IMG/VR virus record: IMGVR_UViG_3300027759_006101 | Coordinates: 294,270 to 358,269 of that record | Reading direction: 5' to 3' (one strand) | DNA: 64,000 nt | Shown here: in pieces, positions 13,424 to 51,521 of the stretch | How the letters are laid out: every line of letters begins with the position of its first letter | Numbering within the stretch: position 1 is the first letter of the stretch | The notes under the pieces: generated by a model | What the model was told of the DNA's origin: nothing | Database searches by the model: none | What the model saw: the letters and a program-made list of their open reading frames with translations, nothing else | Position numbers and translations under genes: made by a program

Positions 13424-13915
13424 TCAGTCGGTATCGTCAGACATATAAGTTTCAAAATCCCAGTCTTCATCCAACTCATCCATATTGTCCCATACATTTC
13501 GTAAAACAAATAAATTTGTATGGGATAATATGGATAAAATTAAACTATCAACAAGAGAACAAACAGAAAAATAATTATTTTTCTTATAATCAGTGAATTT
13601 TACAGATGCATATATGACATCTCCTACTCTGTTCTCTATACAAATACTTTCAACACTTGAATTATAATGATTCAGTAAACGCAAAAACATTTGATGTATG
13701 ATCATAACGTGAGCGTTTAAGTGATAATCCTTAATAACAAAATTCAACAAACTAGCTTCGTACGGAGCAATCTCACAGGCCACTTTTTTCAACCCATCAC
13801 TCAGTAATATAAAAACTCTGGTTTCAGAGTCTACTATTACTTTTTCTAAAAGGATAGGAATAGTTTCATAACGATCATCATTGTGAATATTATTTCTATC
13901 TATTTTTTTTGGCAT
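13424..13915 (-). CDS. Divergent bifunctional nuclease (BFN/DUF151)-like protein (163 aa)
   Basis: EIAPYEASLL ~ IGPFEAQAI; IHQMFLRLLNHYNSSVESICIENRVGDVIYASV ~ THDLL...VERVVI......FYA; SLVDSLILS...LFVLRNVWD ~ RPSDAIALA...IYV.EEV. Acidic tail. Confidence 0.65.
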   Translation of the reverse strand: MPKKIDRNNIHNDDRYETIPILLEKVIVDSETRVFILLSDGLKKVACEIAPYEASLLNFVIKDYHLNAHVMIIHQMFLRLLNHYNSSVESICIENRVGDVIYASVKFTDYKKNNYFSVCSLVDSLILSILSHTNLFVLRNVWDNMDELDEDWDFETYMSDDTD

Positions 13916-14301
13916 TTTGAATTTCCTGTATTACACACTCTGCAAAGTTTGCAAATTTTATTGTTTAATATATTTGAAAATATAAGCATCAATGAACCAA
14001 TAATCATTAAGTAATTTATTTCTTTATGATCGGAATGCTTGTGTTCATTTAAAAAATAACCTGCAAATGTTATGATAATTCCTAAAGAGAAAAACCATAA
14101 TATATTGTAATTTTTGTGAGTTTTGATTCCAAAGCAAACATTATAAATATTTATTGCGCAAGATATAAATAATAAAATAAATTCTATTTTTGAATCAAGC
14201 ATCAAGTAAAGAGCTGAAGTAGGCAAAAATATCATAAATAAAGGTAATATCGTGCAGTGCAAAACACAAACAATACTAGCTATATTTGCGAATTTTATCA
14301 T
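13900..14301 (-). CDS. MerC-domain membrane protein (133 aa)
   Basis: N-terminal ASIVCVLHCTILP matches the MerC-family S..CAIHC...P motif. Four hydrophobic segments, a HKHSDH loop and a Cys-rich C-terminus (CKLCRVC...C). ATGA-coupled to dnaK. Confidence 0.8.
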   Translation of the reverse strand: MIKFANIASIVCVLHCTILPLFMIFLPTSALYLMLDSKIEFILLFISCAINIYNVCFGIKTHKNYNILWFFSLGIIITFAGYFLNEHKHSDHKEINYLMIIGSLMLIFSNILNNKICKLCRVCNTGNSKCQKK

Positions 14302-15992
14302 AGATTGACTTTCTTTTTTGCTATGTCATGAACTTTTAGAGAGATTTCTTTAATAGTTTCTTTTGCACTTTCTAAGAGACTTGAAAGTAACTCAATATTG
14401 TGACTTTTGCCATCTTGTTCTATTGATTTCTTGAGATCTAGTAATTCATTAACATCAAGTTTATCTAAAACATTAGTTCTAAGTAATTCTTCAATTTGAA
14501 TTTCACAATCATAAAGAAGATCGTGCATATTTGTAATCTTTCTAAAGTGCTCATCTTCGTCTTTGTGTTGTTGTGCTTCATCAATAATTTTTGATATTTC
14601 TTGACTTGATAACGACGATCTGCCTGTAATCTCAATGTCTTTTTCTATTCCATTATCCAAACTTGTGGCTTTGACTGAAAGAATTCCATTTGGATCAATT
14701 TGAAACGTGACTTCAAGTTTTGGCAATCCTCTTGGTTTTTCTTCTACCCCATCAAGTTTAAATTCCCCAAGCAACAAATTATCTACTGTTTTGGGTCTCT
14801 CTCCTTGATAAATCTTTACATCAACTTCTGTTTGATTATCATATGCAGTTGTAAAGATTTCCTTAACAACTGAGGGTACTTGAGTATTTCTGGGAATTAA
14901 GATACTCATAATCCCACCTTGTGTCTCTATACCTAAAGAAAGTGGTGTAACATCAAGCAAATAAACTTCTCTGCTTGATTTTCCTGTCAAAACTGATGCT
15001 TGAATAGCTGCACCGACAGAAACAGCTTCGTCAGGATTAATTGACTTATTGGGCTTTTTTCCGAACTTTTCTTCTATTACTCTTTCTATTAGTGGAATTC
15101 TTGTACTGCCACCAACAAAAACAATTTCATCAATTTTGTCAGTTTTTAAATTAGCGTCTCGTAATGCATCATTGACACAGAGCATTGTTTTATCAATGTA
15201 TGTCTTGATAGATTCTTCAAATTCTTCACGATTAATCTTGAGTGGCTCTTTTCCAACCATTACATTAGCCACAGTCATATGAGAAAGCATCTTTTTAGTC
15301 TTCTCAGAGATATTTCTTAAATCAATCTGATCTAAAGTAACATTAGTTTTGCTAAGAATTACTTTTCCAAGTGCTTCATCAAAATCAACACCACCAAGAG
15401 ATGTATTACCAGATGTAGATTGAACGTGGAAGTCAACACCGTCCATAAGCTTAAGCAAGGTGACATCAAATGTTCCTCCGCCTAAGTCATATACTAAAAT
15501 CGTTGCATCATTTTTCTTATCTAGACCATATGCCAAAGATGCTGCAGTAGGTTCATTGATGATACGTAATACTTTAAGACCAGCTAATTCTCCAGCTGTT
15601 TTAGTAGATTGCCTTTGGTCGTTGTTGAAATATGCAGGGACAGTAATTACAGCTTCAGTTACTTCTTTGCCCAAATGCCTCTCTGCGCAATTTTTAAGAT
15701 ACTTTAGGATGTATGATGAAACTTCTTCTGGGCTGTAGGATTTGCTATTTATTTCAAATCTCTTATTAGTCCCCATTTGCCTCTTTACAACACGTATAGT
15801 ATGAGAAAAGGGCAAATGCTGCTCCATATCAACAGCATATTGCCCTACATAAATCTCATCACCAAAACTGACTACGCTGGGAGTAATTCTTTCACCTAAA
15901 TCATTTGGGATAACTTCTGGCTGATCTTTGTCATTTACATAAGAAACTACACTAAAAGTACTTCCTAAATCAATTCCAATTGCGTAACTCAT
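14298..15992 (-). CDS. dnaK: Hsp70/DnaK-family chaperone, compact (564 aa)
   Basis: GIDLGST, TPSVV, AVITVPAYFN, RIINEPTAA, YDLGGGTFD, VGGSTRIP, NPDEAV..GAAIQA, LLDVTPLSLGIET, IYQGER, FQIDPNGIL. Confidence 0.95.
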   Translation of the reverse strand: MSYAIGIDLGSTFSVVSYVNDKDQPEVIPNDLGERITPSVVSFGDEIYVGQYAVDMEQHLPFSHTIRVVKRQMGTNKRFEINSKSYSPEEVSSYILKYLKNCAERHLGKEVTEAVITVPAYFNNDQRQSTKTAGELAGLKVLRIINEPTAASLAYGLDKKNDATILVYDLGGGTFDVTLLKLMDGVDFHVQSTSGNTSLGGVDFDEALGKVILSKTNVTLDQIDLRNISEKTKKMLSHMTVANVMVGKEPLKINREEFEESIKTYIDKTMLCVNDALRDANLKTDKIDEIVFVGGSTRIPLIERVIEEKFGKKPNKSINPDEAVSVGAAIQASVLTGKSSREVYLLDVTPLSLGIETQGGIMSILIPRNTQVPSVVKEIFTTAYDNQTEVDVKIYQGERPKTVDNLLLGEFKLDGVEEKPRGLPKLEVTFQIDPNGILSVKATSLDNGIEKDIEITGRSSLSSQEISKIIDEAQQHKDEDEHFRKITNMHDLLYDCEIQIEELLRTNVLDKLDVNELLDLKKSIEQDGKSHNIELLSSLLESAKETIKEISLKVHDIAKKKVNL

Positions 15993-16008
15993 AATAAAGG
16001 ATTATACA

Positions 16009-16362
16009 TTATTCAGGTTCTTCTGGTAATACAGTTCCTCCAGGCACATATCCTTCCATCAATTCTTTGAGAGCATCTTTATTTTCAAGCTTTTTTCTAA
16101 ACTCAAGACTTTCATTTTTTGTTATTGGCCCTATCGCTATATTTTTATCTTTGTCTTTTGGTAAATTGTCTTTATACTCGTGAGCCATTGACATTAATTG
16201 TATTATTGCAAAAGTATCTTTACATTTTGAACAACGCATAATAGCGTAAACTTCTACTTCTGACTTAGGCAACCAACCCAAGTGAGATAATTTTGTAAAT
16301 TGAGTTTTACAATTTCTATTAAGACAACACTTCGGTTTGCCGATGATAGTTTGATGGAACAT
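16009..16362 (-). CDS. Small Cys-rich putative Zn-binding protein (117 aa)
   Basis: Start re-called to ATG 16362, 4 nt after SD GGAGGTG. Contains CCLNRNC and CSKC Cys clusters and a PITKNE..EF..KL helix. Confidence 0.7.
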   Translation of the reverse strand: MFHQTIIGKPKCCLNRNCKTQFTKLSHLGWLPKSEVEVYAIMRCSKCKDTFAIIQLMSMAHEYKDNLPKDKDKNIAIGPITKNESLEFRKKLENKDALKELMEGYVPGGTVLPEEPE

Positions 16363-16473
16363 AGCACACCTCCAATGCACAAATGAGCAATTTAATATTC
16401 CTGTTAGAACAAAGCTTGACTTTTATTAAGAACCATTAATAGGACAAAATAAACTTGATATTGTATACTATTA

Positions 16474-16509
16474 TAGTCCACTGGCGGATAAATTGAGGCC
16501 AGTGGATAT
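16474..16509 (+). promoter_or_regulatory. GC-rich hairpin upstream of the small ORF
   Basis: TCCACTGGC (16477-16485) / GCCAGTGGA (16498-16506), 12-nt loop, followed by TATTTTT. A possible AGGACA-17-TATACT promoter at 16441-16469 would start transcription at the stem base. Confidence 0.55.
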
Positions 16510-16533
16510 TTTTATGTAAGGAGGAAAATGATT

Positions 16534-16605
16534 ATGAAGATTTTTGAACAACTTGAAGAAATGATGAATCAAGTAATTTCAGCATTATTCAACGTAGAAT
16601 TGTAA
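16534..16605 (+). CDS. Unannotated 23-aa small protein MKIFEQLEEMMNQVISALFNVEL
   Basis: Perfect SD TAAGGAGG at 16517-16524, 9 nt before ATG 16534 (alternative ATG 16528 gives 25 aa). Flanked by a 5' hairpin and a 3' terminator. Below the ORF-track size cut-off. Confidence 0.65.
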   Translation: MKIFEQLEEMMNQVISALFNVEL

Positions 16606-16613
16606 GGTAACTT

Positions 16614-16640
16614 ATAATCTACAGCGTCGTAGATTATTTT
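16614..16640 (+). terminator. Terminator-like hairpin after the small ORF
   Basis: ATAATCTAC (16614-16622) / GTAGATTAT (16629-16637), 6-nt loop, T-rich 3' side. Overlaps the stop of the convergent helicase gene. Confidence 0.6.
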
Positions 16641-18400
16641 AATTCAAACATTTTCCAAGCTCGTTCATTCTTATAAACTTTCTTTCTCATATTTACGTGA
16701 GATCTCAAATTCTTATGACTTGAGGCAAAATCAATAATAATAGCTTCAGGTTTTCCATTCTTTATAGAATCTTCAACATCTTTGCCTACACATCTTAAGA
16801 CTCTTCCAACTTGCTGATAAGTTGTGACTGGTGATGAACTAGTCCCAGCAAGAATTAGACAAGAGATTTTAGGAGCATCAACACCAACATTTGCCCACTG
16901 TGTTGCAATCAAGACTATTTCATTATTCTCAACTGCATTAAGCATTCTTCGACGATAATTCTTTTCCTCATCGCTTGGGTCTATTTCGCCTTTATCGCCA
17001 CCAGGTACAAATACTGCGTCCTCTATCATTCCTTCAAGAATATTGCCGTGTTCCATCCTTTCAACAAGAATAAGAGTAGGAGTACCCTTTTTTTTCATAG
17101 CTTCGGCAAATTGTTTTATTCTAAAATTTCTTTCCCAGCAATTAACAATATTTAAATTGTAAACTTCATGATAAGTTTGGCCAGGTTCTACAGTATCTAT
17201 ATTTACTACAAAGATTTTGGGTGGAACTAAGTACCCTCTCTCCACGAGATCACTGGCACTTACTTCGCATACTTTACCGCCCAAAGTACCTTCTATCCTG
17301 ATTTCTTGATTATCGGTACGAAAGGGAGTTGCAGATAAACCCAATCTGTAATATGCATTCTTTGCTTGATTACCAATTTCTTCAGTAACAACAGCTGCTA
17401 AATGTGCTTCGTCTATAATCAAAGCATTACAGTTCTTGATTACATCTCTGACTTGAGATTTTTGAAATAATATATTCTGCCTATTGTCCCAAGCTGATTG
17501 AGCTTTCTTATAATCTGACAATTCTTTTTTTACTAAGATTGACAATTCACGATCATACTGTTTTCGTAATTGAATTAAGTTTTTTGCAGAACTTTCTTCA
17601 GCTTTTTCAACTTTCTCATACAAGTCTGAAAGTTTTCCTGAAGCCACATGAGTTGCTTTTTTGTAGTTTGATAGAGCTACTTCTAATTCTTTTTGAAGAA
17701 AAGCAGTTGGTTTACTTCCTTCCCCATTATCGTCAACAATTTTGCTGTTTGTTTCAACATATTTTCTATCAAAAGCTATCAAAGCTGTCTGATATGTAAT
17801 GACGTTGATGCCTTCCATATTTAAGTCGCATAATCCGCCACCGGCAATTCCAACTTTGACTTGATTGCCATTGAACCTTAAATACTTTTCAAATTCTTTT
17901 TGCGTCTGTTTTAATAATTCAATTGCTGGGACTATAAATACAACTGGCTTGACTTTCAATTTTTGAAAGATATAACATGAAGTCATAGTTTTACCAGCAC
18001 CAGTAGCTAAAGCAAGCATTCCTCGTTGATTTTTCAAGGCTAAATCGCCTGAAAAAACTTGATAATCTCTAAGTTCTTTACCCATAAAATCACAAGTCAG
18101 CTCGTAATCTCTTGTAGGCTTGACTCTTTTGTCAATAAATTTATAATTTATTTTCAATTCATCAAAAAGTTTAGCTACACGCATAGTAAGGCCAGTAGGA
18201 AAAGATTGATTCCGCTTTACATAAAGAGAAATTTTCCCATCCCATTGTCCAGTCTTAAACTTTGCAGACCATTCTGAATCAGGAACTTTGTAGGACAACT
18301 CATTCCTCAAAGCTTCTTGAATTGGGTATGATAATTTACCAAAACTATCGTCAGTGTTAATTAGCACACTACGGTCATTGTAAACTTCAATCTCAACCAT
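16634..18400 (-). CDS. Superfamily 2 DNA helicase (UvsW/ResIII-like, DEAH) with a coiled-coil insertion (588 aa)
   Basis: Q-motif LRDYQ, Walker A ATGAGKT, DEAH, motif III SAT, motif V GVDAP, motif VI QQVGRVLR. Confidence 0.92.
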   Translation of the reverse strand: MVEIEVYNDRSVLINTDDSFGKLSYPIQEALRNELSYKVPDSEWSAKFKTGQWDGKISLYVKRNQSFPTGLTMRVAKLFDELKINYKFIDKRVKPTRDYELTCDFMGKELRDYQVFSGDLALKNQRGMLALATGAGKTMTSCYIFQKLKVKPVVFIVPAIELLKQTQKEFEKYLRFNGNQVKVGIAGGGLCDLNMEGINVITYQTALIAFDRKYVETNSKIVDDNGEGSKPTAFLQKELEVALSNYKKATHVASGKLSDLYEKVEKAEESSAKNLIQLRKQYDRELSILVKKELSDYKKAQSAWDNRQNILFQKSQVRDVIKNCNALIIDEAHLAAVVTEEIGNQAKNAYYRLGLSATPFRTDNQEIRIEGTLGGKVCEVSASDLVERGYLVPPKIFVVNIDTVEPGQTYHEVYNLNIVNCWERNFRIKQFAEAMKKKGTPTLILVERMEHGNILEGMIEDAVFVPGGDKGEIDPSDEEKNYRRRMLNAVENNEIVLIATQWANVGVDAPKISCLILAGTSSSPVTTYQQVGRVLRCVGKDVEDSIKNGKPEAIIIDFASSHKNLRSHVNMRKKVYKNERAWKMFELK

Positions 18401-18407
18401 AATTATT

Positions 18408-18416
18408 AGTATACCA
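18408..18416 (-). promoter_or_regulatory. Extended -10 promoter (TGGTATACT) 7 nt before the helicase ATG; probably leaderless
   Basis: Minus strand reads TTTG-TGG-TATACT-AATAATT-ATG. No SD. Lies directly after a strong terminator. Confidence 0.55.
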
Positions 18417-18417
18417 C

Positions 18418-18457
18418 AAAGAAAACAACCATTTTGTTGCTGCCAACAAAATGGTTG
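18418..18457 (-). terminator. Rho-independent terminator, perfect 14-bp stem
   Basis: CAACCATTTTGTTG (18426-18439) / CAACAAAATGGTTG (18444-18457), 4-nt loop, followed on the minus strand by TTTTCTTT. Confidence 0.88.
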
Positions 18458-18477
18458 AGTACTTAAATTAAATTTAT

Positions 18478-18903
18478 TTACTTGTTATTCATTGCATTGA
18501 ATTTATTTACTGCAATATTAATTTGTTTTGGTTTCTTGGAGACAAATTTTTCAAGAGTTGTAAGAACCAGCAATTCAATCTTTTCAGTATCTTCTTCACT
18601 TAGCTCAACGCCTTTTTGAACAGCACCAAGCTTAATAAATCTTACAAATTGATCAACTGCGTCTTCACTTGAAAATTCACCATCTTCAATCTTTTTCAAG
18701 CCTTCGATCCAAATGTCAAGGATTGCTTCGCCTTTCTGTCCAAGTGCATTTGAAAGAAAAACCTTAACCAGCTCGAGTGATGATATAGTGTCTGATATAG
18801 GTGCTTTAGTTCTGGCATAAAAAAATAATACTGCAGAACCAAAAACAAAACAAATTATTAATAAAATAATATCATTTTGAACTGCACTTAAAATTTTGTC
18901 CAT
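18478..18903 (-). CDS. Single-TM membrane protein, possibly holin-like (141 aa)
   Basis: N-terminal hydrophobic segment IILLIICFVFGSAVLFFY, then helical soluble region. GVELSEED..KIE.LV loosely recalls LL-H-type holins (weak). Confidence 0.6.
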   Translation of the reverse strand: MDKILSAVQNDIILLIICFVFGSAVLFFYARTKAPISDTISSLELVKVFLSNALGQKGEAILDIWIEGLKKIEDGEFSSEDAVDQFVRFIKLGAVQKGVELSEEDTEKIELLVLTTLEKFVSKKPKQINIAVNKFNAMNNK

Positions 18904-18904
18904 A

Positions 18905-19126
18905 TTAGCAATCCTTTGCTATTACCGAATCATCTTCATTTGATGAATTTGGATCTAAATCCATATCTGTAGTCAAAGGAATTACCAATTCGTCCTTGAT
19001 AGCTACTACTTCATCTTTATTTTCTTTTTCATCCGCCCAGACTACCGAATTATCAACTTCTACTTCTTCGCCTTCTGCATTAGTAAAGTTTTCGATTTTG
19101 CCTGTTGCTCTCTTAATCATACTCAT
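18905..19126 (-). CDS. Small acidic hypothetical protein (73 aa)
   Basis: ATGA-coupled to dnaJ and 1 nt from the next gene; D/E-rich. Confidence 0.7.
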
Positions 19127-20103
19127 AACATTTTTCTTCCTTTTCTTGATTCAATATAAGACTTCAAAGCGTCAGTTTCAACTTCATTTAAGTCGTTAGG
19201 TATATTATACTTGAATTTTATATGCAAATCAGAATAATTATTTTCGTCTACTGGTATTCCTTTATTCTTGATGATGTGAACATAATCATTTCTAATAGAT
19301 TTAGAAAATTTGAAATTTAAAATATTTCCATTAATATGTTTGTATTTGAAATTTGGTTCTACTATGCATAGGATAGGATCTATTTCAAACTCGTGTAACA
19401 TATTTAGGTTACTATCAAAATCAAACGAATCTTGCTTTTTCACATTAATTTCTATCATCAAAGGGCCTGGAGCTTGATGTTTATCACCGAAGTTGCCACG
19501 ATTAGGTAACATAACACTCTTGAAGCATTGACCTTTCTTGATTGTAAGATCAAACATTTCTTTTGCAATCACGTAGCCTTTACCCGAACACTTGTTGCAA
19601 AGTGATTCTGGTCTTTCTCCTCGACCTTGACAAGTTTGACAGGGGCCAGCATAATTTCTTATATGGAAGAAACCAACGTTTTGAACAACATAATGTTCTC
19701 CACTTCCCATACAATCAGTGCACAAATTGATTTTGCCAAAACCACCATCACCACTACAATCACGACAAGGCATCATTCTCTCATAAAATATCGGTTTTAT
19801 CGCATCACTGAAACATTCTTTAATCGAAAGTTCTATCTTTAACAAAACAGGGACATTGAGATTGCGGCGAAAAGCATTTAAGTGAGTTTTCCTAAATGGA
19901 TTATCAGGAAAAGGCATGTGATTCTGAGGCTTGGGGTTTAAGACATCCTCATAGGCCTGAGAAATTTCCTTAAACTTTTCCTCAGCATCAGATTGTTTAT
20001 TTACGTCTGGATGATATTCTTTGGCTAACTTTCTGTAAGCTTTTTTAGCATCATCTACGCTAGAATTCTCTGGTATTCCTAAAACTTCATAGGGACTAGG
20101 CAT
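19123..20103 (-). CDS. dnaJ: DnaJ/Hsp40 co-chaperone, class A-like (326 aa)
   Basis: J-domain with [16 protein letters not shown] (HPD). Four CxxCxGxG motifs ([32 protein letters not shown]) and a C-terminal domain. G/F region nearly absent. Confidence 0.95.
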
Positions 20104-20110
20104 AAACTCA

Positions 20111-20782
20111 TTATACTAATTTAGATAGCATATTCTGTATTTTATTAGACGGGCAGACAGAACTTTCACCAACACCAATATCTGCGTGTTGTCCAGTTAC
20201 TCCCATAATAGTTCCGTATATCAAATTATCAACACCAATTACCATTCCACCAGATGAACCTTCTAATATGTCAGCATCAATAAAAATTATGTCATTCCAA
20301 GCTGGCATATTTGAATCTGCGATGCTTTGATGAATATTTGACACTCTACCAACAGTTGCAGTGTCGTGAAATCCCTCAGGAGCACTTATAACTGCTATAA
20401 TATCTCCAACTTCTAAAGCATCACTATTGCCAAATCTCAAGGGAGCAACATTAGGATCAAACTCTAATCTTACTGCTCCCGAGTCAATAGAGGGATCGGA
20501 AACTAAAAATGATGCAGCAATGTATTTTTTGCCATCAAATGTACACATAATTTCAGTAAGTGTTTGATCATTAGGAACTACGTGGCCAGCAGTGACAACA
20601 ATATTATTTCCAATATAAAAGCCACTACCTGACCAGTTTTTTTTACCAGATCTTACATAAATAGTACAGGAAGAGCCTAATCCTGTTTGTATTGTTTTTT
20701 TCACAGGATCATTGACTAAATCTGTTGTTTGCGAAGTCTTTACTAATGACTCCAATAAATTACAGTCTATCTTAAAATTCAT
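20111..20782 (-). CDS. Trypsin-like (S1, HtrA-type catalytic domain) serine protease without PDZ (223 aa)
   Basis: [12 protein letters not shown] (His), DSGAVRL (Asp), [11 protein letters not shown] (Ser), [14 protein letters not shown]. No signal peptide. Confidence 0.88.
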
Positions 20783-21243
20783 TTTATAACTTTGTAGATA
20801 ATTTCATCTTTTTTTATAGGACCGAATCTTCTACTGTCGTCAGAGTTATTCAAGTTATCTCCAACAACAAAATAAGAATCTTCACCTAACTTATACTCTT
20901 GAACTGCATCTCCGTAGTTTGCTTTAGCTTCAAGAATAGATCTGAAAGAGTTATCAAGTAAAAAAACCATTTGAAACTTTTGGGAATCTAATATGTAGTA
21001 ATAATAATCCCCAGGAGTAAAAATAATTCTTTTTACTATAATAGCATCTTCACTAGTATCATTTATTACTACAATATCTCCTCTATTGTATTTGTTTTCT
21101 CTCTTGGCTAAAACAATTTGTCCATTACGTAATGTTGGCATCATAGATTGTCCAACAATTACTATCAACTTATAAGGTTGTAAATAAAAAGATAGACATA
21201 TCAATAAACTAACAAAGCAAGAAACTATAAATTTCTTATCCAT
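20779..21243 (-). CDS. lepB: Signal peptidase I (S26 family), ~154 aa
   Basis: TM anchor, VGQSMMPTL (catalytic Ser), RGDIVV, IVKRII (catalytic Lys), GDN..NSDDSRRFG. Start chosen at ATG 21243 after SD GAGGTG (the ORF track starts at 21279). Confidence 0.88.
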   Translation of the reverse strand: MDKKFIVSCFVSLLICLSFYLQPYKLIVIVGQSMMPTLRNGQIVLAKRENKYNRGDIVVINDTSEDAIIVKRIIFTPGDYYYYILDSQKFQMVFLLDNSFRSILEAKANYGDAVQEYKLGEDSYFVVGDNLNNSDDSRRFGPIKKDEIIYKVIK

Positions 21244-21307
21244 ACTCCACCTCACTGGTATGTTATGAGTTAGAGTCATTTTTGTTTTTTTGCTTGCTCT
21301 TTTAGAA

Positions 21308-22309
21308 TTACTTTTTAATTAAAATAGTGTTCCAGTCAACATTTGCTAATTTAGGAACACCAGGACCCCAATTTTTTTCTTCTCCCGAATCAACAACAGT
21401 ATTTTCCATAGAACAGATATTATGTAATGCAACCATCATATCTGCTTGGCAAAATTGGTTTCCAAACTCCTGCAATAAATTTAATTTTTTCAATGCAGAC
21501 TTTATCAATGCACAAATTCCAGCAACAAATGGTGATGCTTGACTTGTACCTGACATTTTACAATATTCATTTCTTAAGAAAGTTGAATATATATCTACTC
21601 CTGGAGCAACAATATCTACAGTTTCATCTTTTGATGTAAATGTTGCAAGTCTTCCGCCTGAATCTAATGCAGCAACAGCAATTACTTCATCATATCTAGC
21701 CGGGTAATTAACACTTTTGGAATCATTGCCAGCAGCTGCAATAACAACAATACCTTTTGACACTGCTTCTAAAATCAAATCATGAATAAACTTTGGTGGC
21801 TCAGAAGATGAACCTAAAGACATATTGATTATGTCAACATTTAATTCAATAGCTTTTTTTAATCCAGCGGCAATAGTTTCAAAACTACCAGAGCCATCAT
21901 CATTTAAAACTTTTATTGGAATAACTTTGCAATTTGGAGCAACTCCTACAACACCAAAGTCATTATCACTTCCAGCTATAATTCCGGCAACGTGTGTCCC
22001 GTGTCCAGAAGACTTATCTTCCCAGGAATCACTATCCGAACAATTAAAGACAGATTCTTTTGTCCAGCATTCTGATAAGTCAACGTGTTCTGCAATTCCA
22101 GTATCTAAAATTGCTACAACAACATCTTCTCCTTTAGTTAATTGCCAAACATTTTGTATTGAAGATAGTCCCAAACCCCAGTTTTGAGTTTGAGAAAGAG
22201 CACTGAAAGGTACAGGTGTAACTTCTAAATCTTCAATTGGAATGAATTGAATATTTTCAGACAATTCTTCCACAACTTCGACAGAGATTTCATTATTATT
22301 TTCGGACAT
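21308..22309 (-). CDS. Subtilisin-like S8 serine protease (333 aa)
   Basis: VAILDTG (Asp), HGTHVAGII (His), AAAGN (oxyanion), SGTSQASP (Ser). Short acidic N-terminal pro-segment, no signal peptide, SD GAGGT. Confidence 0.95.
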   Translation of the reverse strand: MSENNNEISVEVVEELSENIQFIPIEDLEVTPVPFSALSQTQNWGLGLSSIQNVWQLTKGEDVVVAILDTGIAEHVDLSECWTKESVFNCSDSDSWEDKSSGHGTHVAGIIAGSDNDFGVVGVAPNCKVIPIKVLNDDGSGSFETIAAGLKKAIELNVDIINMSLGSSSEPPKFIHDLILEAVSKGIVVIAAAGNDSKSVNYPARYDEVIAVAALDSGGRLATFTSKDETVDIVAPGVDIYSTFLRNEYCKMSGTSQASPFVAGICALIKSALKKLNLLQEFGNQFCQADMMVALHNICSMENTVVDSGEEKNWGPGVPKLANVDWNTILIKK

Positions 22310-22358: not shown

Positions 22359-25300
22359 TTAAATAATGTGTACTATTTGACTATCTTGTGGGACTCCATA
22401 AAACTGTCCGTCATATGGCGTAACTGTGAAAGAGATTGCTTTATTTTTAAGAACCAGTGAAGAATTTAAGACACTTCCTTCTGCAATTTTAAAACTTACA
22501 CCATTAGTCCACTCAAACCATTCAACTCTGGATAAATCATTTGTTGTGCTAAAATAATAATATGCTTGTAAATCATTATTTGATTGAATATTATTATTTG
22601 TAATTTCAACAACTGACTTAATTTTTACATCAGATACATAAGGAGCTGTTTGACTCTTGAGTATTACAGGGCTTGAAGTATAAGATATTCCATAATCAAA
22701 GTTATCGTAAGGTTCAACAACTACATACACTTGATCGTTTTCTATAAAGTAATTATTTGCAGAATTCAAATCTGATTTATTTTGTAATAATTTATTTCTG
22801 TAATTAGGTGATGAATCAAGCTCAGATACAGTAGTTCCACCACCAGATGTTCTAACTCTATACCATTTAGACTTGGGCCTATATTCTTCATTATCAGAGA
22901 TATATTCATAAGATGTGAAAAACCTTTCACTTAATGAAACTTCTGAAGTAGAACCAGCTGAAACTTTAAAGGCTCTAGAATCTATTTGCAAAGACTCTGA
23001 TGTTAATGATGGAATTGGAGTATTTACATATCGAGAGTAGACATCTTTATTTGGGACAGTATTATTAGTAAATTCAAAATTAATTGTTTCGCTTGCGTTT
23101 GAATTAAATTTTTCTAACTTTAATCCAATTCTATACGAAGTATTACCAGCTATAAATAGAGTAACAATGTCGGATGAACTTCTTCTTACGTTAAAAATAA
23201 TTCTGCCATTTACTCTATCTAATTTATATCCGCCTCTAACTATTTCATTGTTCACTAAAACAACGATTTTACTATCTCCGGGCCATCTACCATTTACAGC
23301 GTAATAACTTACATAATCTGCAGATATCGTTCCTTCACCTAAAGCTTCATATCTTTCGTTTCCAGTGACAATTGTTGCTCTTACATTATTGACATCTACA
23401 ATATCAGAGGTAAAAGTAATTGTGCCGTTTACATTATTCGAGGTGTAAAGAGTTGTATCGACAAGAGTATCATTTATGAAGACTGAAATAGAGTCTGATA
23501 AATTCCAAGTGTATCTAGTGCCATTTTCATAAACAAAGAAAGTTCTGCTATTGTTTGGGGATTTCAAGCAAATTAATTTTTCTTTTATTACTTGTTGTGT
23601 AAATTTATAAGATTTTTGTCTTGATGCAAAAACACCATTTTTACCAGATAAGATTTCTTCAAAGTCTTCCCAATTAGTACTATTTCCCTTGCAAACACCC
23701 CAGGTTAATTTGGCGAGAGAAGTGTCTGAATAGTTTGTTGAAAGAATATACTCAAAAATATCTTCAGCAGTTGTCAAAACATCACTAAACAAATAATCTA
23801 CACTTGGGGCAACTTCTGTGTAGTAAAGAGTTTGCACATATGGAGTAACCTTTGATTGAGTTGCGTTATTCCAACCCTCTGTCAATGTAATCTTAAAATC
23901 AATATTTGTAATTTCTTTATTTATAGGAGTAGTTGACGCAAAAGAAGCCCAACTGCTAAAGTTTTTTCTATCTTTAGAATATCTATACTCAACTAAACAA
24001 GAACTATCTACGCTTTGCCCTGTAGAAGCTACATAAGAAGTAGTAATCGATTTTATATATTTTGGGTCTGAAAATTCTAAGTTTTTTGACCAAGTGCCAG
24101 AGAATAAATTGTTACTTCCGCCGTGAATTAAATCATTGCTTAGATTTGTCCAATAAGTATCTGAACTTGCATCAAAAACCAAACCTTGAGTTTCTTGATT
24201 TACCTTTCTGATAAAACCAGTATTAGCATTTTCATCAATGTCAAAAGATAAAACTTTAGTTCCTTGATTATTCCAAGAGTAATTTATTCTTTCAATCAAT
24301 TTAGTTTGATTTATAGTTTCATCACTATCGAAATCACTTACAATATTGACTAAAGGAATAAATGATTTGCCCCATCTTTCCATCATATATTCAGAAACTG
24401 TTGTGTTAGAAGGTATAGATGTATGTGTGCCGTCCCAATCTTTTCTGAAATATATCTCTATTTCATCAGTTGAAACAATCGGAGTACTAAAAGTTATTTG
24501 ACCTGTGCTTGGGCTAGTTGTAAATCCCGAACTAAGAATTGAGGAATTTTTTACTATTTCAACATATGGATATTCTGAAATACTCCAAGTAAAAGTATTA
24601 GTTCCATCTGAAGAAATTGTTATTGTGGTTCCTATGCTACCAGTCACAGGAATAATATTAAGTTGTTTTTGACTCTCGTTTTTATATCTGGTCTTTAAGT
24701 CAACAATCCTAAGAAGATTATTACTATATAAATAATCTCTTACGGCAGTTATTTCTGTTGTATTTGAAATGCCTGATATAGCGCTTGGTTGCTGTCCAAT
24801 TAAAGCGTATTCTAAACACTCGTACAAATTGCTGCTATCACCGTCAAAAGCTAAGTCAGAAATTATATTTGTAATTGCTGTGCCAGAATTTGTAAAACCA
24901 GCAGAACTTCTGTGCTTGATTTCTGAACCTAAAGTCCAAAGATCTTGGTAAGTCCTTCCTGCTGTTCTAGTGAAAAGTGAAGTAAGGTATGAATTAAATT
25001 TACTTTTTGGATTATAAGCTCTATTTACAGAATTAGAACTATCAAAAACATTGGAAACTAAAAACTTTGAATCTAAAACTAAATGACCACTATCATTAGC
25101 TAGAACACCTTTGAAAACACCAGTTTCCCAATTTACTTCAGAATTATCATAATTTCCAACAGATACAATAGTGTCTGTGGGTGATGAGTTAATATCATAA
25201 TGAACTTTATAGAAAAAATCTTGATTTAGTTGTTCGTACCAAGTAGAACCATTCACACTTGTAAATGCAGCGCCGGAAACGGGATTTACTTGAGTTGATT

Positions 25301-28300
25301 TTCTCCAATTGAACAAAGGAACTGAACTTGATGTTTCCTTAATAACAATTGCCAAGGTAGTGACACCAGAACCAGGAATGTCTAAGTCTGAAGTTAAGTC
25401 AAAAGTAGTAAATCCATCTCGCCTTACACTTAAGGAAGTTATGGACGTAGACGAAGCTAATTGTGTTTGAGGCTTACTATTCGAGTCAACTGAATAAACA
25501 TATGCGATCAATGATGAATTCGTAACACTATCATTATAAGATGCATTTGAAAGACTATCTTGGTCTCTTACAGTCACATATGCAGACACCTTAGTAATTG
25601 TGTTAGCCGTTGAAGCTGTAGTAAATGTTTGTGCCAGGTATCCCACAGTGTTTGAATCATTAGCGACAAACTTTATCTGACTTGCTGGTTTAGACTCAAA
25701 TAATACTGGAGAATATCCTTCACTAGTATTTTCTCCAGTCCTGTACCAATTGTCTCCATCATCTAAAGTATACCAAAGACCATTATTGGTTGCAGCTAAT
25801 AAAACATTTTGAGTTAATGAATTGAAAGAAGATAAAAATATTTTCAAATCAAATACTGAAGATGGATTTGTTCCCATAAATTCAGTTTTATGAAAAGAAT
25901 TGCCCTCATCAAACGATCTATAAACACCCTTGTTTGTCCCAATAAATATTTTAGATTTTCCTGGAGTTGACCCAATAGCAGTGTCAGTATCGATAGCGTA
26001 ACAGAGACATTCAATATTACGTAAATATCTCTGGTCAACTACATAATCTGAAGAACCAAGATTATCAGGATAAGAATACTTCCAGTTTTTTACTTTGATT
26101 AACCCATCATTGGTAAGAATAAATAATGGATTTGCATAAAGACTATTTGCAGAAGATGTTGGAACAGAATATGCTTGAAAGGAATTATAGAATCTTGTAA
26201 CTCCATCTGGATTTCCTGATGCAAACATTTTTCTTGGATTTATAAATTGACCAAAAGATGAATTATTTGCTTGATAGCCTAAAACATAATATCCATCATC
26301 TCCTGAAGCGTGTAAAGATTCATAAATTTGAGTAGTGCCAGAACCAATCTTGATGTACTGCCCCTTGAAGAAACCGTTTATATTAGAGCTTGTTAATTTC
26401 AAGAAATCAGATGTAAAAGTTCCATTTTCATAAATCTTGATTGATAAGCCGTCTGATTTACCAAAAGCTTCAAACAAAAGACCGTTCCAAAAACCTTTCA
26501 GATAGCAATTTTGTTTTTTATCATCAACTTTTGTCCAAGTAGTATTGTATTTCCATAAGCCATTTGTTGCTCCGACTAAAATGTCTAACTCAGGATTTTG
26601 AACAATATATGCAGTGTCTGAAGCATTATCAAGAATAGAGTCTAAAGCCCATTTATTATTGACACATTTCCAAACACCTAAATCAGTAGCAATTTTAGTA
26701 TTTTCACCAGTTTTTTCAGGACTTAAGATTGCTCTAATCATAACAGGATCACTTTCTGGATCTGTTATAGAGGGGACTAATTCTGTTCTTTTCTTGTATG
26801 AAGAGTTGTCAGGGTCTAAAGTACTGGAAGATAGGAAATTACTTACTAAAAGGGTATTTTTAAGGCCTCTTGTATCAGTTTGTGATACTACTGGAGCTAC
26901 AAAGTCAAATACTGTAGATATGCCAGCTTTAAGACTTCTGGCTAATTCTTGGATGTTTTGATTATTAGAAGAATCTAAATAATATTTTTGTTTTGATTTC
27001 AGGACATAAATATCATCTTCTAATCCAGATACAACATCATCAGCAACTCCATAGACTTCAGTGTTTTTCAAAAATGAAATTCCACTTGATGATCTTGCAG
27101 ATATTAGCACAACCTCTATAGGAAATACTGTATTGTCTATTGACTTGACTATAACAAGTTCTGAAGTTGTTTCGTTTTTTAACAGTAACAAATCATAAGA
27201 CGAAATTCTTTGATTAAGTAGAAGAGTTGTATCTGAGTTGATATTGTCCTTCCAAAGTTTTGCTATTGGTAAACTTGTTCTTGATATAGGTACGAATGTT
27301 GAGCTGTGAGGTTTAGTACCGGAATTTGTAATTGCTGGATTTTCACTCACAACAGAAAGTGTTATATTTTCTAAATCATCTTTTGAAACTGACTGCAAGA
27401 AAGTAACTGTACCTTCTAGAGAATTTGTAAAAAATGGTATTGAACTTGGCTTATTATTTATATAAACCATATTTCGAGTTTGTGTATTTGAATGTACACT
27501 CCAAGGATCCGTATTAAAAGTAGTGAAATTGTTTTCGTAATAAAGCTGCTCGCCTGAAACGTAAGACGTACCTGTTGAAACTAGTTGATAATTATAAATT
27601 AAGCTTAAATCGTTTATAGCTTGATAGTCTGAATTGTAAACTACAAAATTAGGTTCTATTGCTCCAAAAGTATCATTTGGTCTTTTCCATTTATATCCAG
27701 AAAGAATAAAAGAATAATTGCTCGTATCATCTTCCCAAAGTAAATCAGAGCTTATGAATATACCATTTGTAGTGCCAGCGTATAATTTGCCACTATTAGT
27801 TCCATCATCATAACTAAATAGAGTATTTACACTTCCTTGAAACAATGGTTCCCAATACAATTCTGATGCTGAAATTGTTGTATTGTCTACAGAAAAATCT
27901 TTTATTCTTGCAACACCATTTGAATGTCCAATAAAATATTCATTAAAAAATCTAAAGCTTTTTCTTTCTGTTGCACAAGTAATGATGGATCTTGCACTTG
28001 CGCCAGAGGGAGTGTTAGTAGAATAAACTTTTAACTTATAAACATCCCATTCTAAATTTGACGTTCCTAAATTAAAAGAGTCATTAGGTTTCAAAAACCA
28101 AACGCTTGATCCAAAAACAGTGCCATTAGTAACATTAATTTTTTTATAGCTTACAAATTCTGAAGAAACATCCAAATCTGTAGCTCTTGACCAGCCACCA
28201 GAAGCAGCAAGATAAATTCCATTAGTTCTCTTGTCGGTTTGGTCTTTTACTAAAACTCTATCTAATGCAGAAAGAGTATATCCATCAATGGTTTGCAATC

Positions 28301-30929: not shown

Positions 30930-30935
30930 TTTACC

Positions 30936-36311: not shown

Positions 36312-36317
36312 ATTTTA

Positions 36318-43636: not shown

Positions 43637-43696
43637 CTTGATCCACCACTGTCAGAGATTACTTAAAATATTCTTATCCAGCAGCTCAATAACCTA

Positions 43697-44659: not shown

Positions 44660-44662
44660 AAT

Positions 44663-48328: not shown

Positions 48329-48570
48329 TATCTTTTTTCTCTTGGTTTATATTCTGCTGTAACTTTTTGTAGTCCCCAGTTAGAATATCCCCATCGCAGT
48401 ACATCTTCAGTTTGTAAGGTGTCTGTATTTGTAAGATTGACCATTTGCATTTGTTGTGCGACAGGGCTTCTTAAAGAAACGTTGTTGCTCTCAACTGCGT
48501 CTTTGAATCTAATTTGCTCTGAAATAATAAAAGATAGGGAATTGAAAGATGCCATAATACTAAATATCAT
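48328..48570 (-). CDS. Small hypothetical protein (75-80 aa)
   Basis: Bridges the hub-like and 1221-aa genes with overlapping start/stop; contains RWGYSNWG. The start could be the second ATG (48555). Confidence 0.6.
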   Translation of the reverse strand: MIFSIMASFNSLSFIISEQIRFKDAVESNNVSLRSPVAQQMQMVNLTNTDTLQTEDVLRWGYSNWGLQKVTAEYKPREKR

Positions 48571-51484: not shown

Positions 51485-51521
51485 ATATTTTAATTATAAA
51501 TAAGTTAAAAAGTAATATCCT

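What the first reader, a model, noticed from the sequence alone, without database searches (positions are those of the whole stretch)
13424..22309. Phage-encoded proteostasis module: DnaK, DnaJ and three unrelated proteases next to the giant virion genes
Seen: directly downstream of about 13,000 aa of giant virion-type proteins, on the same strand, lie S8 subtilisin, S26 signal peptidase, PDZ-less S1 protease and DnaJ (several ATGA-coupled or abutting), with DnaK 3 kb further on. All catalytic residues are intact. Known: jumbo phages often carry GroEL-like chaperonins, and single DnaJ or protease genes occur. Inference: a DnaK/DnaJ pair together with three mechanistically distinct serine proteases may form a dedicated folding and maturation system for 1-3.5 kaa fibre proteins. 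I do not know of such a module being characterised.
Basis: partly seen in the sequence, partly recalled or inferred. Interest (0 to 1): 0.72.

Follow-up and report, generated by a model that had tools for sequence, protein, structure and literature searches.

The report
Phage chaperone and protease core genes
A huge freshwater phage really does carry DnaK, DnaJ and three intact serine proteases next to its giant virion genes, but relatives show that subtilisin, trypsin-like protease, DnaJ, helicase and DnaK form an old core gene backbone that exists without giant genes, so a fibre-only role is unlikely.

Summary
The window is the last 64 kb of a 358-kb IMG/VR phage record from lake metagenomes. 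On the minus strand, downstream of 13,712 aa of large ORFs, lie S8, S26, S1, DnaJ, two small ORFs, UvsW, a zinc-ribbon ORF, DnaK, MerC and a BFN-like ORF. All catalytic motifs are intact.

- A positionally conserved terminator splits the stretch into three units: giant ORFs to orf141, UvsW alone, and orf123 to the BFN-like ORF.
- The order S8, S1, DnaJ, small ORF, TM ORF, UvsW-like helicase recurs in distant phage contigs (GC 31-58%). One of them also keeps the orf123-like ORF and DnaK.
- In the three distant contigs with readable upstream sequence, transferase genes or ordinary-sized ORFs flank S8, not giant ORFs.
- S26 is membrane-anchored, should face outward, and sits elsewhere in a complete 441-kb relative, as does DnaK.
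- The genome has a separate head-maturation protease domain beside its portal gene.

Best reading: a general phage-encoded proteostasis set, which also includes GroEL, ClpP and a second J-protein. DnaK plus DnaJ in freshwater jumbo phages is already published. I found no description of the S8-S1-DnaJ cassette. Protease substrates remain unknown.

The parts
21308..22309 (-). S8 subtilisin-type serine protease, 333 aa. It has no signal peptide and no I9 prodomain. A short N-terminal extension carries a conserved F-I/L-P ... ALS..WG motif.
   Evidence: Pfam PF00082, E 6e-60. D69, H103, N195 and S256 align to subtilisin and are invariant in 8 homologues. It ranks 18th in conservation between G000 and the 441-kb relative. 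In L079 and L085 an intein sits in its catalytic His motif.
20779..21279 (-). S26 signal peptidase I, 166 aa, with one N-terminal membrane anchor. The catalytic domain is predicted to lie outside the cytoplasm.
   Evidence: Pfam PF10502, E 2e-24. The Ser (SMMPT), Lys (VKRII) and GDN..S.DSR boxes align to solved signal peptidases and are kept in relatives. The hydrophobic segment is at residues 15-33. The gene sits at a different site in G001.
20111..20782 (-). S1 chymotrypsin-fold serine protease, HtrA-like, 223 aa, without PDZ domain or signal peptide. It belongs to a small subfamily known so far only from metagenomes; every member whose gene context could be read lies on a phage-like contig.
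   Evidence: Pfam PF13365. H67, D100 and S177 are invariant and align to DegP/HtrA. Only 12 clusters at 50% identity reach E <= 1e-30 among 1.8 billion representatives. It ranks 13th in conservation against G001.
19123..20103 (-). DnaJ, 326 aa: a J domain with HPD, a 30-aa linker that is not G/F-rich, four CxxCxGxG zinc-finger motifs and a C-terminal substrate-binding domain.
   Evidence: Pfam PF00226, PF00684 and PF01556. Motifs counted. Collinear in all relatives.
18905..19126 (-). orf73, a small acidic protein whose start overlaps the DnaJ stop (ATGA). Its N-terminus MSMIKR recurs in the ORF after DnaJ in distant lineages (MSMIKRG, MPMVKRG, MMIKKG).
   Evidence: MSMIKR is otherwise found in G000 only at the start of the major head protein.
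18478..18903 (-). orf141, with an N-terminal transmembrane segment and a helical domain of about 110 aa. It is the last gene of the unit. ORFs of similar size and architecture follow in distant lineages.
   Evidence: Identity to the distant ones is only 17-20%, so homology is likely but not proven.
18426..18457 (-). Intrinsic terminator: a 14-bp stem, a 4-nt loop and a T-run. A -10 box of TGnTATAAT type (GGTATACT) follows, ahead of UvsW.
   Evidence: A hairpin plus T-run lies at the same position in nine relatives, with four different stem sequences.
16634..18400 (-). UvsW-type SF2 helicase, 588 aa, set between two hairpins as its own unit.
   Evidence: Pfam ResIII, DEAD, UvsW_N and Helicase_C. 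PHROG DNA helicase. It is part of the collinear backbone in all lineages.
16009..16380 (-). orf123, a zinc-ribbon protein 16 nt upstream of DnaK. It stays with UvsW in G001 and precedes HSP70 in L084.
14298..15992 (-). DnaK/Hsp70, 564 aa: a full nucleotide-binding and substrate-binding domain with a short C-terminal lid. Cellular DnaKs found here have open frames of about 630-690 aa.
   Evidence: Pfam PF00012, E 1e-159. It is 45-51% identical to cellular DnaKs of three phyla. It is 48-88% identical within the phage clade and 49% to L084.
13900..14301 (-). MerC-family membrane protein with 4 transmembrane segments. Its start overlaps the DnaK stop (ATGA).
   Evidence: Pfam PF03203, E 1e-18. Transmembrane segments. 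Kept after DnaK in relatives at 28-41% identity.
13424..13915 (-). 163-aa ORF with a weak bifunctional-nuclease-domain match, below the Pfam cut-off. It is the last gene of the DnaK unit and abuts the convergent tail-tube-side genes.
22359..63863 (-). Nine ORFs of 320-3479 aa, 13,712 aa in all, nearly without gaps. They are the giant genes upstream of S8 in this clade.
   Evidence: The order is kept in G001.

Best explanation
The stretch holds core genes of a lineage of huge freshwater phages (358 to 441 kb). Together they give the phage its own protein-folding and protein-cutting equipment.

Shown:
- There are three transcription units. Unit 1 runs from the giant ORFs through S8, S26, S1, DnaJ and orf73 to orf141. 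Unit 2 is UvsW. Unit 3 is orf123, DnaK, MerC and the BFN-like ORF.
- The order S8, S1, DnaJ, small ORF, TM ORF, UvsW is conserved across phage contigs that share nothing else locally. One contig, L084, also keeps the orf123-like ORF and DnaK.
- The same genome also carries GroEL, ClpP and a second J-domain protein. No GrpE or GroES was found.

Inferred mechanism:
- DnaJ binds unfolded or nascent phage polypeptides and hands them to the phage DnaK. Nucleotide exchange would depend on host GrpE.
- S8 and S1 lack export signals, so they should work in the cytoplasm. S8 has the build of an intracellular subtilisin, which is held inactive by a short N-terminal peptide until it processes itself.
- Their likeliest job is to trim or clear phage or host proteins during a long infection that must produce very large amounts of very large proteins.
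- S26 was added in one branch. It sits in the membrane and cuts signal peptides from exported proteins. The phage encodes at least five candidates.
- In this clade the giant proteins are co-expressed clients at most. They are not the reason the cassette exists.
For: - Domains and catalytic residues.
- Phage identity and lake origin.
- Unit structure.
- RNA-library contigs bridge every gene junction from the 2856-aa ORF to orf141 and stop at 18491. None lies on the 5' part of UvsW. This is weak evidence.
- Clade-wide collinearity down to 32% identity of the giant ORF.
- Backbone in distant contigs (L079, L082, L084, L086, plus S8-S1 pairs in L032, L080, L085). Identities to G000 are S8 41-48%, S1 34-43%, DnaJ 24-29% and helicase 28-33%.
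- Only 97 of 379 ORFs are shared with the complete relative G001, yet DnaK, UvsW, S1 and S8 rank 8th, 10th, 13th and 18th in conservation.
- Inteins sit in the S8 catalytic His motif in two lineages.
- Proteostasis inventory of the genome.
- ORFs with signal peptides.
- In some relatives peptide deformylase, Thg1 and IF3 are inserted inside the cassette, which fits a theme of protein synthesis and maturation.
Against: - No substrate is known for any of the three proteases.
- Conserved order may be inherited synteny of unrelated core genes. The replication helicase UvsW sits in the middle of the backbone.
- The cassette is co-transcribed with virion genes in this clade, which would also fit a morphogenetic role.
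- The intracellular-subtilisin motif [LVI]-[IFLV]-P-[YFH] is matched exactly only in two relatives (LIPF, LFPY). The window copy has FIPI.
- The S8 model is unreliable at its N-terminus.
- The S8-S1 complex prediction gave no answer.
- Signal peptides and topology come from a simple hydropathy script, not a trained predictor.
Confidence: 0.5

Rival explanations
1. First reader's view. The chaperones and three proteases are a dedicated folding and maturation line for the 1-3.5 kaa fibre proteins encoded just upstream.
For: - S8 to orf141 follow the 2856-aa ORF with a 49-nt gap and no terminator. This adjacency holds through the whole clade, including G001.
- A second J-domain protein lies 1.5 kb upstream of another giant ORF of 1942 aa.
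- Three giant ORFs carry tail-fibre-type domains.
Against: - The cassette occurs without flanking giant ORFs in three distant lineages with readable upstream sequence.
- The S26 active site should face outward, and the giant ORFs lack signal peptides.
- DnaK and S26 move away in G001.
- DnaK is a separate transcription unit.
- A second giant-gene block at 242-279 kb of the genome has no detected copy of S8, S1, DnaJ or HSP70 nearby.
Confidence: 0.15
2. S8 and S1 are morphogenetic proteases that process head or tail proteins during assembly, with DnaJ as an assembly chaperone. The cassette would then be part of virion morphogenesis in general.
For: - S8 and S1 have core-gene status and are strongly conserved.
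- They sit at the end of a structural operon.
- orf73 and the major head protein are the only two ORFs in the genome that begin MSMIKR, which could be a shared recognition or targeting signal.
- Iyer et al. argue that well-conserved jumbo-phage peptidases usually serve maturation (PMC7824862).
Against: - The head module has its own head-maturation-protease domain, in the 1379-aa ORF next to the portal (phrog_18299, E 4e-20).
- That module lies about 255 kb from the cassette.
- In other lineages the cassette lies among transferase and nucleotide-metabolism genes.
Confidence: 0.15
3. The set serves host takeover. The proteases degrade host proteins for amino acids or to disable defence and regulators. 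DnaJ and DnaK redirect or replace host chaperones that some defence systems and sigma-32 control depend on.
For: - Intracellular subtilisins recycle protein in stationary-phase bacteria (PMC6220982).
- The J-protein Rki of phage RB43 acts on host DnaK and sigma-32, and DnaJ is needed by a bacterial NLR-like defence. Both are cited in PMC12619734.
- Standalone S8 genes in Bacillus and Moorella phages lie among replication and early-type genes, not virion genes.
Against: - Host-directed phage genes are usually patchy, whereas these are core genes and collinear.
- They are co-transcribed with late-type structural genes in this clade.
Confidence: 0.12
4. There is no functional link. The genes are unrelated core genes kept side by side by the conservative genome order of this phage family.
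For: - The flanking tail-tube-side genes, gyrase and UvsW are equally collinear across the clade.
- A DNA helicase sits inside the backbone.
- Unrelated genes are freely inserted between S1 and DnaJ.
Against: - S8 and S1 stay adjacent, or within three genes, in every lineage seen, often with overlapping stop and start codons.
- The same order survives where every other detectable similarity in 10-20 kb is lost.
Confidence: 0.1

Closest known systems
DnaK and DnaJ of 'moraphages', freshwater jumbo phages (Perez-Hernandez et al. 2025, PMC12619734)
   Same: Large lake phages that encode both an Hsp70 and a DnaJ, noted as unusual. Proposed roles are folding of viral proteins or counter-defence.
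   Different: - Most moraphage DnaKs nest inside Flavobacteriaceae, which points to recent transfer. This DnaK is equally distant (45-51%) from Bacteroidota, Firmicutes and Planctomycetes.
- Moraphage genomes are 200-307 kb with T4-type virion genes. This lineage is 358-441 kb, and Pfam finds no Gp23 or T4 portal, although the controls for those searches were silent.
- No subtilisin, trypsin-like protease or signal peptidase is discussed there.
J-domain co-chaperones of jumbo phages (Iyer et al. 2021, PMC7824862) and Rki of phage RB43
   Same: A phage-encoded J domain with HPD that is predicted, or for Rki shown, to act on an Hsp70.
   Different: Those phages carry a J-protein alone and are thought to recruit host DnaK. 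This phage also has its own DnaK, a full class I-type DnaJ with zinc finger and C-terminal domain, and a second J-protein.
Intracellular subtilisin proteases (ISPs) of Bacillus and Planococcus (PDB 2X8J, 6F9M; PMC6220982)
   Same: An S8 catalytic domain with intact triad, no signal peptide and no large prodomain. There is a short N-terminal extension with a hydrophobic-Pro motif. ISPs are among the strong PDB matches (7xr8 E 5e-46, 2wv7 E 2e-41).
   Different: - The window copy has FIPI rather than LIPY/F.
- True secreted subtilisins score slightly higher than ISPs.
- Docking of the propeptide and dimer formation could not be tested.
Standalone S8 proteases of large Bacillus and Moorella phages (Tsamsa gp173, MTATph1 CDS0070; PHROG 3677)
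   Same: Phage-encoded subtilases of about 290-330 aa without export signals, 38-44% identical to this one.
   Different: They lie among replication and nucleotide-metabolism genes and have no S1 or DnaJ neighbour.
HtrA/DegP family (S1C)
   Same: A chymotrypsin fold with the His-Asp-Ser triad. The best PDB matches are DegP, HtrA and DegQ.
   Different: There is no PDZ domain and no signal peptide, so it is predicted to be cytoplasmic. It forms a small subfamily known so far only from metagenomes.
Bacterial type I signal peptidase (LepB/SipS, S26A)
   Same: A Ser-Lys dyad, conserved boxes and one N-terminal anchor, like the short Gram-positive enzymes (PDB 4nv4, 4me8).
   Different: It is encoded by a phage. 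Among 50,697 GenBank phage records only 17 match, all at 35% identity or less, and most are unannotated Enterococcus- or Listeria-labelled fragments or faecal contigs. My reading is that many of these are host-derived.

Membership tests
Hsp70/DnaK | Full nucleotide-binding plus substrate-binding domains | tested here: met
   PF00012 matches residues 4-551 to profile positions 1-594 of 599, E 1e-159.
Hsp70/DnaK | Cognate nucleotide-exchange factor GrpE in the same genome | tested here: not met
   PF01025 is not found in the 358-kb record, while 13 of 14 control genomes ring. The record is 89% complete. The phage DnaK may use host GrpE.
Class I (type A) DnaJ | J domain with HPD | tested here: met
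   PF00226, E 5e-19. HPD is present in the window copy and in six homologues.
Class I (type A) DnaJ | Gly/Phe-rich linker after the J domain | tested here: not met
   Residues 58-88 ([28 protein letters not shown]...) contain no glycine.
Class I (type A) DnaJ | Four CxxCxGxG zinc-finger motifs and a C-terminal peptide-binding domain | tested here: met
   PF00684 and PF01556 match. The window copy has four motifs and relatives have three or four.
Subtilase S8A | Asp-His-Ser triad and oxyanion Asn in the canonical order | tested here: met
   D69, H103, N195 and S256 align to subtilisin DY and Carlsberg and are invariant in 8 sequences.
Intracellular subtilisin protease (ISP) | No signal peptide and no I9 prodomain | tested here: met
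   The mature-subtilisin alignment starts at residue 40. Pfam finds only PF00082. The N-terminus is acidic.
Intracellular subtilisin protease (ISP) | N-terminal propeptide motif [LVI]-[IFLV]-P-[YFH] (PMC6220982) | tested here: inconclusive
   The window copy has F-I-P-I, which fails positions 1 and 4. L082 (LIPF) and L084 (LFPY) match exactly. An aromatic-hydrophobic-Pro core is seen in most lineages but only the Phe is invariant, and L032 has no Pro there.
Intracellular subtilisin protease (ISP) | Propeptide lies across the active site; homodimer | tested here: inconclusive
   In the AlphaFold2 model residues 1-54 have pLDDT below 50, and the alignment has only 8 rows. The dimer was not tested.
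Signal peptidase I (S26A) | Ser-Lys dyad in conserved boxes B and D, plus box E | tested here: met
   GQSMMPT, VKRII and GDNLNNSDDSR align to PDB 4nv4 and 4me8 and are kept in four relatives.
Signal peptidase I (S26A) | N-terminal membrane anchor with the catalytic domain outside | tested here: met
   Hydropathy finds one transmembrane segment at residues 15-33, preceded by R and K residues. The topology is inferred from the positive-inside rule, not measured.
HtrA/DegP (S1C) | Chymotrypsin-fold protease domain with His-Asp-Ser | tested here: met
   PF13365 matches. H67, D100 and S177 are invariant. The best PDB matches are DegP and HtrA.
HtrA/DegP (S1C) | One or two C-terminal PDZ domains and export to the periplasm | tested here: not met
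   The protein ends 40 residues after the catalytic Ser. There is no PDZ hit and no signal peptide. It is therefore not filed as HtrA proper.
Moraphage lineage (PMC12619734) | T4-type major capsid and portal proteins; DnaK nested in Flavobacteriaceae | tested here: inconclusive
   Pfam Gp23 and Portal_T4 give no hit, but the controls were silent or nearly so. The major head protein matches phrog_2522. DnaK is 45-51% identical to 60 Bacteroidota genomes and close to none of them. No moraphage sequence was available for comparison.
Prohead (head-maturation) protease role for S8 or S1 | Absence of another head protease, and a position in the head module | tested here: not met
   Next to the portal, a 1379-aa ORF carries a head-maturation-protease domain (phrog_18299, E 4e-20). 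S8 and S1 lie about 255 kb away.

The most novel reading that the evidence does not exclude
S8, S1, DnaJ and the two small ORFs after DnaJ form an ancient, essential phage machine. A self-inhibited cytoplasmic subtilisin and a PDZ-less trypsin-like protease would work with a J-protein, which feeds them or Hsp70 with chosen clients. The clients might be marked by the MSMIKR-type N-terminus that orf73 shares with the major head protein. That would be a virus-encoded triage system for protein folding or degradation in huge phages, with no described counterpart.
Probability: 0.2. Interest if true: 0.7.

Novelty: new variant of a known kind. Interest (0 to 1): 0.5.

Why it matters
Huge phages must fold and assemble proteins far larger than most host proteins, and how they manage this is unknown. 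This work shows that one widespread lake lineage carries a conserved core set: its own Hsp70, two J-proteins, GroEL, ClpP and two cytoplasmic serine proteases.

It also gives a concrete cassette (S8-S1-DnaJ) and a defined S1 subfamily that can be used as markers to find such phages. It separates what is ancient from what was added later (signal peptidase, adjacency to giant genes). If the proteases and DnaJ work together, that would be a new kind of virus-encoded proteostasis control. If they do not, the finding is an extension of the already published presence of DnaK and DnaJ in freshwater jumbo phages.

Tried and rejected
- **S8-S1 complex prediction.** The result was 'no answer' (score 0.00, controls not run). 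It counts neither for nor against binding.
- **AlphaFold2 model of S8,** made to see whether the N-terminal motif docks on the active site. The N-terminus has pLDDT below 50, so the model cannot be used for this.
- **PDB searches with the S8 N-terminus alone and with a profile.** The intracellular-subtilisin propeptide was never aligned.
- **S8 or S1 as the prohead protease.** S77, S78 and S78_2 are absent by Pfam, although the S77 control was silent. I rejected this as the leading idea once the head module with its own protease domain was found.
- **Recent host origin of DnaK.** Rejected: identity to cellular DnaKs is flat at 45-51%. The genome-contig scan found only six loci because of its exact-word patterns. 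A 'Kapaibacterium' MAG holds copies at 57-60% identity on small contigs, most likely binned phage DNA.
- **Cassette next to DnaJ in other phages.** Huge-phage DnaK-DnaJ pairs elsewhere in IMG/VR (L003-L016) have no S8 or S1 beside them.
- Viral-contig scans with two distant S1 proteins found nothing.
- **Promoter scan.** It is not informative in this AT-rich DNA: 57 sites found against 41 expected. An 8-mer count upstream of genes gave no clear late-promoter motif.

Full report
**1. What is in the sequence**

The window is bases 294,270-358,269 of a 358,269-bp IMG/VR virus record, linear and 89% complete by CheckV. Near-identical DNA is held by many lake and freshwater metagenomes. From 63,863 down to 13,424 every large ORF is on the minus strand.

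- S8 at 21308-22309
- S26 at 20779-21279
- Trypsin_2 at 20111-20782
- a full DnaJ at 19123-20103
- HSP70 at 14298-15992

Between DnaJ and DnaK lie orf73, orf141 (one transmembrane segment), a UvsW-type helicase and a zinc-ribbon ORF (orf123). After DnaK come a MerC-family membrane protein and a 163-aa ORF with a weak nuclease-domain match.

Catalytic residues are intact:
- S8: D69, H103, N195 and S256 align to subtilisin.
- S26: the Ser and Lys boxes align to solved signal peptidases.
- S1: H67, D100 and S177 are invariant in 15 homologues.
- DnaJ: HPD and four zinc-finger motifs are present.

Stop-start overlaps (ATGA) join S26/S1, DnaJ/orf73 and DnaK/MerC.

The upstream ORFs total 13,712 aa. 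Three giant ORFs share a domain of about 100 aa with tail-fibre, head-decoration and virion-structural PHROGs. Two belong to this run (2856 and 1450 aa). The third is the plus-strand ORF cut by the window start (1942 aa in the genome). The 1791-aa ORF has a PA14 domain, and the remaining large ORFs have no match.

**2. It is a phage, and the genes are not recent host copies**

The genome has a large terminase, a portal, a major head protein and a 1379-aa ORF with a head-maturation-protease domain. All of these lie at 40-60 kb of the record.

The DnaK is 45-51% identical to DnaK of 60 Bacteroidota genomes. It is 46-48% identical to DnaK of Firmicutes and Planctomycetes genomes. Within the phage clade identity is 48-88%. 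It is also about 70-120 residues shorter at the C-terminus than the cellular open frames.

The S1 protease belongs to a small subfamily. Among 1.84 billion cluster representatives, only 12 reach E <= 1e-30. No GenBank phage record has a match above 32% identity.

**3. Transcription units**

A 14-bp hairpin followed by a T-run lies between orf141 and UvsW, at 18457-18426. Every relative examined has a hairpin plus T-run at this position. Four different stem sequences occur, and each is followed by a box of TGnTATAAT type. A conserved position with divergent sequence argues for a working terminator.

The 253-nt gap between UvsW and orf123 holds a second conserved hairpin and a TATAAT-like box.

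No terminator-like site lies between the 2856-aa ORF and S8. However, the 49-nt spacer holds a conserved AATA(A/T)TAT element, which may be an internal promoter.

The stretch is therefore three units:
- giant ORFs, S8, S26, S1, DnaJ, orf73, orf141
- UvsW
- orf123, DnaK, MerC, BFN-like ORF

Contigs from a lake RNA library bridge each junction from the 2856-aa ORF to orf141 and end at 18491. Only a short piece lies on UvsW. The tool warns that DNA may be present in such libraries, so I count this as weak support for expression.

**4. Conservation in the close clade**

More than 500 proteins in public data match the S1 protease, many at 75-100% identity on contigs of up to 186 kb. IMG/VR relatives with S1 identity of 50-88% keep the whole block in order, from the giant ORF to the BFN-like ORF. 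So do the flanking tail-tube-side genes and gyrase. Within the clade, synteny therefore says little about function.

The most distant IMG/VR relative is G001 (441,498 bp, 100% complete by CheckV, S1 identity 43%). It keeps the giant ORFs, S8, S1, DnaJ, two or three small ORFs, UvsW and the orf123-like ORF in order. Its DnaK lies about 40 kb away, still beside the BFN-like ORF, the tube-side genes and gyrase. Its S26 lies about 177 kb away, among unrelated genes.

All five gene families are thus retained, but DnaK and S26 are not tied to the site. Only 97 of 379 ORFs of the window's genome have a match in G001. Ranked by score per residue, DnaK is 8th, UvsW 10th, S1 13th and S8 18th.

**5. Conservation far beyond the clade**

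I looked up the contigs that carry more distant members of the S1 subfamily (34-43% identity).

| Contig | GC | Gene order |
|---|---|---|
| L079 (113 kb) | 35% | S8 with an intein, two ORFs, S1, Thg1, peptide deformylase, DnaJ, small zinc-ribbon ORF starting MSMIKRG, further ORFs including a 148-aa TM ORF, UvsW-like helicase |
| L084 (110 kb) | 31% | S8, three ORFs, S1, Thg1, peptide deformylase, DnaJ, small ORF starting MMIKKG, 146-aa TM ORF, IF3, helicase, three ORFs (the last resembles orf123), HSP70 49% identical to the window's DnaK |
| L086 | 39% | S8 and S1 overlapping, four ORFs, topoisomerase, methylase, thymidylate synthase, DnaJ, 61-aa ORF, 153-aa TM ORF, helicase |
| L082 | 58% | S8, S1, several ORFs, DnaJ, small ORF starting MPMVKRG, a 75-aa ORF, 144-aa TM ORF, a 146-aa ORF, helicase |
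| L032, L080, L085 | 31-41% | short contigs that show S8 next to S1; L032 has a small ORF and S26 between them |

In the longer loci, apart from a few methyltransferase- or sugar-enzyme-type hits, the backbone genes are the only ones with detectable similarity to the window's genome.

Upstream of S8, three loci carry methyltransferase, glycosyltransferase or sugar-nucleotide genes, and L084 has two ordinary-sized ORFs on the other strand. None has a giant ORF there. In L082 the contig starts just before S8.

In L079 and L085, inteins sit exactly in the catalytic His motif of S8 (GHG|T). From general knowledge, inteins favour conserved active-site motifs of important proteins.

The ancient unit is therefore the ordered set S8, S1, DnaJ, small ORF, TM ORF, helicase and, in at least one far lineage, orf123-like ORF plus DnaK. 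The signal peptidase and the giant-gene neighbourhood are additions of one branch.

**6. Where the proteins should act**

S8 and S1 have no signal peptide or membrane segment.

S8 starts its mature-subtilisin alignment at residue 40 and has no I9 prodomain. Its short N-terminal extension carries a conserved F-I/L-P ... ALS..WG motif. Intracellular subtilisins are kept inactive by an N-terminal peptide of 16-20 residues with the motif [LVI]-[IFLV]-P-[YFH] (PMC6220982). Two relatives match that pattern exactly (LIPF, LFPY). The window copy (FIPI) does not. The structural test failed for lack of confidence.

S26 has positive residues and then one hydrophobic segment at residues 15-33, so its catalytic domain should face outward. 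A simple hydropathy and AXA script finds at least five phage ORFs with classical signal peptides, for example ...SFA|QS and ...AFA|AD, plus a large lipoprotein-like ORF. None of the giant ORFs qualifies.

**7. The wider proteostasis inventory**

The genome also encodes:
- GroEL, but no GroES
- ClpP
- a second J-domain protein with HPD and an unknown C-terminal domain, next to a PhoH-like gene and the 1942-aa ORF

It has no detectable GrpE or peptide deformylase.

**8. Comparison with what is known**

J-domain proteins are sporadic in jumbo phages and are thought to recruit host Hsp70 (PMC7824862). DnaK plus DnaJ was reported in 2025 for 'moraphages', freshwater jumbo phages of 200-307 kb. Most of their DnaKs nest within Flavobacteriaceae (PMC12619734). 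I could not show that the present lineage belongs to that group, and its DnaK does not behave that way.

Small S8 proteases occur in large Bacillus and Moorella phages, among replication genes.

Full-text searches found no paper that links subtilisin with jumbo-phage genomes, and none on a phage-encoded signal peptidase I.

**9. Verdict**

There is a conserved chaperone and protease gene set. Its core is S8-S1-DnaJ(-UvsW-DnaK). It predates and outlives the link to giant genes. DnaK is a separate unit. The signal peptidase works in another compartment.

The likeliest function is general phage proteostasis. The protease substrates remain unknown.

Noticed in passing
window 18905-19126 (orf73) and genome 40446-41300 (major head protein; L055:2446-3300): These are the only two ORFs in the 358-kb genome that begin MSMIKR. 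The ORF after DnaJ in distant lineages begins MSMIKRG, MPMVKRG or MMIKKG. In G001 the head protein begins MSSMIRN and the orf73-like ORF has MMIRRG. This may be a shared targeting or cleavage signal, a translation-start effect, or chance.
   Followed up: partly
L079:6399-8870 and L085:4823-7102: The S8 genes of two distant phage lineages carry an intein with a LAGLIDADG endonuclease, inserted in the catalytic His motif (GHG|T).
   Followed up: partly
window 13900-14301: A MerC-family (mercury transporter type) membrane protein with 4 transmembrane segments starts at the DnaK stop (ATGA). It is kept after DnaK across the clade at 28-41% identity. Its role in a phage is unexplained.
   Followed up: no
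genome 142190-143086 (L060:9190-10086, minus): A phage ORF has a type IV pilin N-terminal methylation motif plus DUF1559. From my own knowledge that pairing is typical of Planctomycetota and Verrucomicrobiota, so it hints at such a host. G001 has a homologue.
   Followed up: partly
window 62-3892: The first large ORF of the window is cut by the window start. In the genome it is 1942 aa (292333-298161, plus strand) and carries the same fibre-type domain as the minus-strand giants.
   Followed up: yes
genome 242133-278557 (L065-L067): There is a second block of giant ORFs (1803, 1513, 1056, 2722, 799 and 997 aa). With it comes a run of about eight paralogous ORFs of about 220 aa that begin MG...GP...DGLV.YLDA.N.RSY. 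No copy of S8, S1, DnaJ or HSP70 was detected beside it.
   Followed up: no
window 5096-9734: The phage encodes full GyrB and GyrA. They are collinear with the tube-side genes and DnaK in G001.
   Followed up: no
genome 215042-216547 and 206392-206925: GroEL is present without a detectable GroES, next to a RuvB-like ATPase. A standalone ClpP lies among small non-structural ORFs.
   Followed up: partly
L084:10956-12417 and 15697-16239; L079:11133-12382: In distant relatives the cassette holds inserted Thg1 (tRNA-His guanylyltransferase), peptide deformylase and, in L084, translation initiation factor IF3. These are translation and nascent-chain functions beside the proteases and DnaJ.
   Followed up: no
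G008 contigs C12:199-1911 and C39:4771-5694: A MAG labelled 'Candidatus Kapaibacterium sp.' holds DnaK copies 57-60% identical to the phage DnaK on small contigs. It also holds more ordinary DnaK fragments. This is probably phage DNA binned into the MAG, and possibly a host hint.
   Followed up: no
genome 43855-47994 (L055:5855-9994, minus): A 1379-aa ORF next to the portal carries a head-maturation-protease domain in its first 250 residues or so. The long remainder has no match.
   Followed up: no
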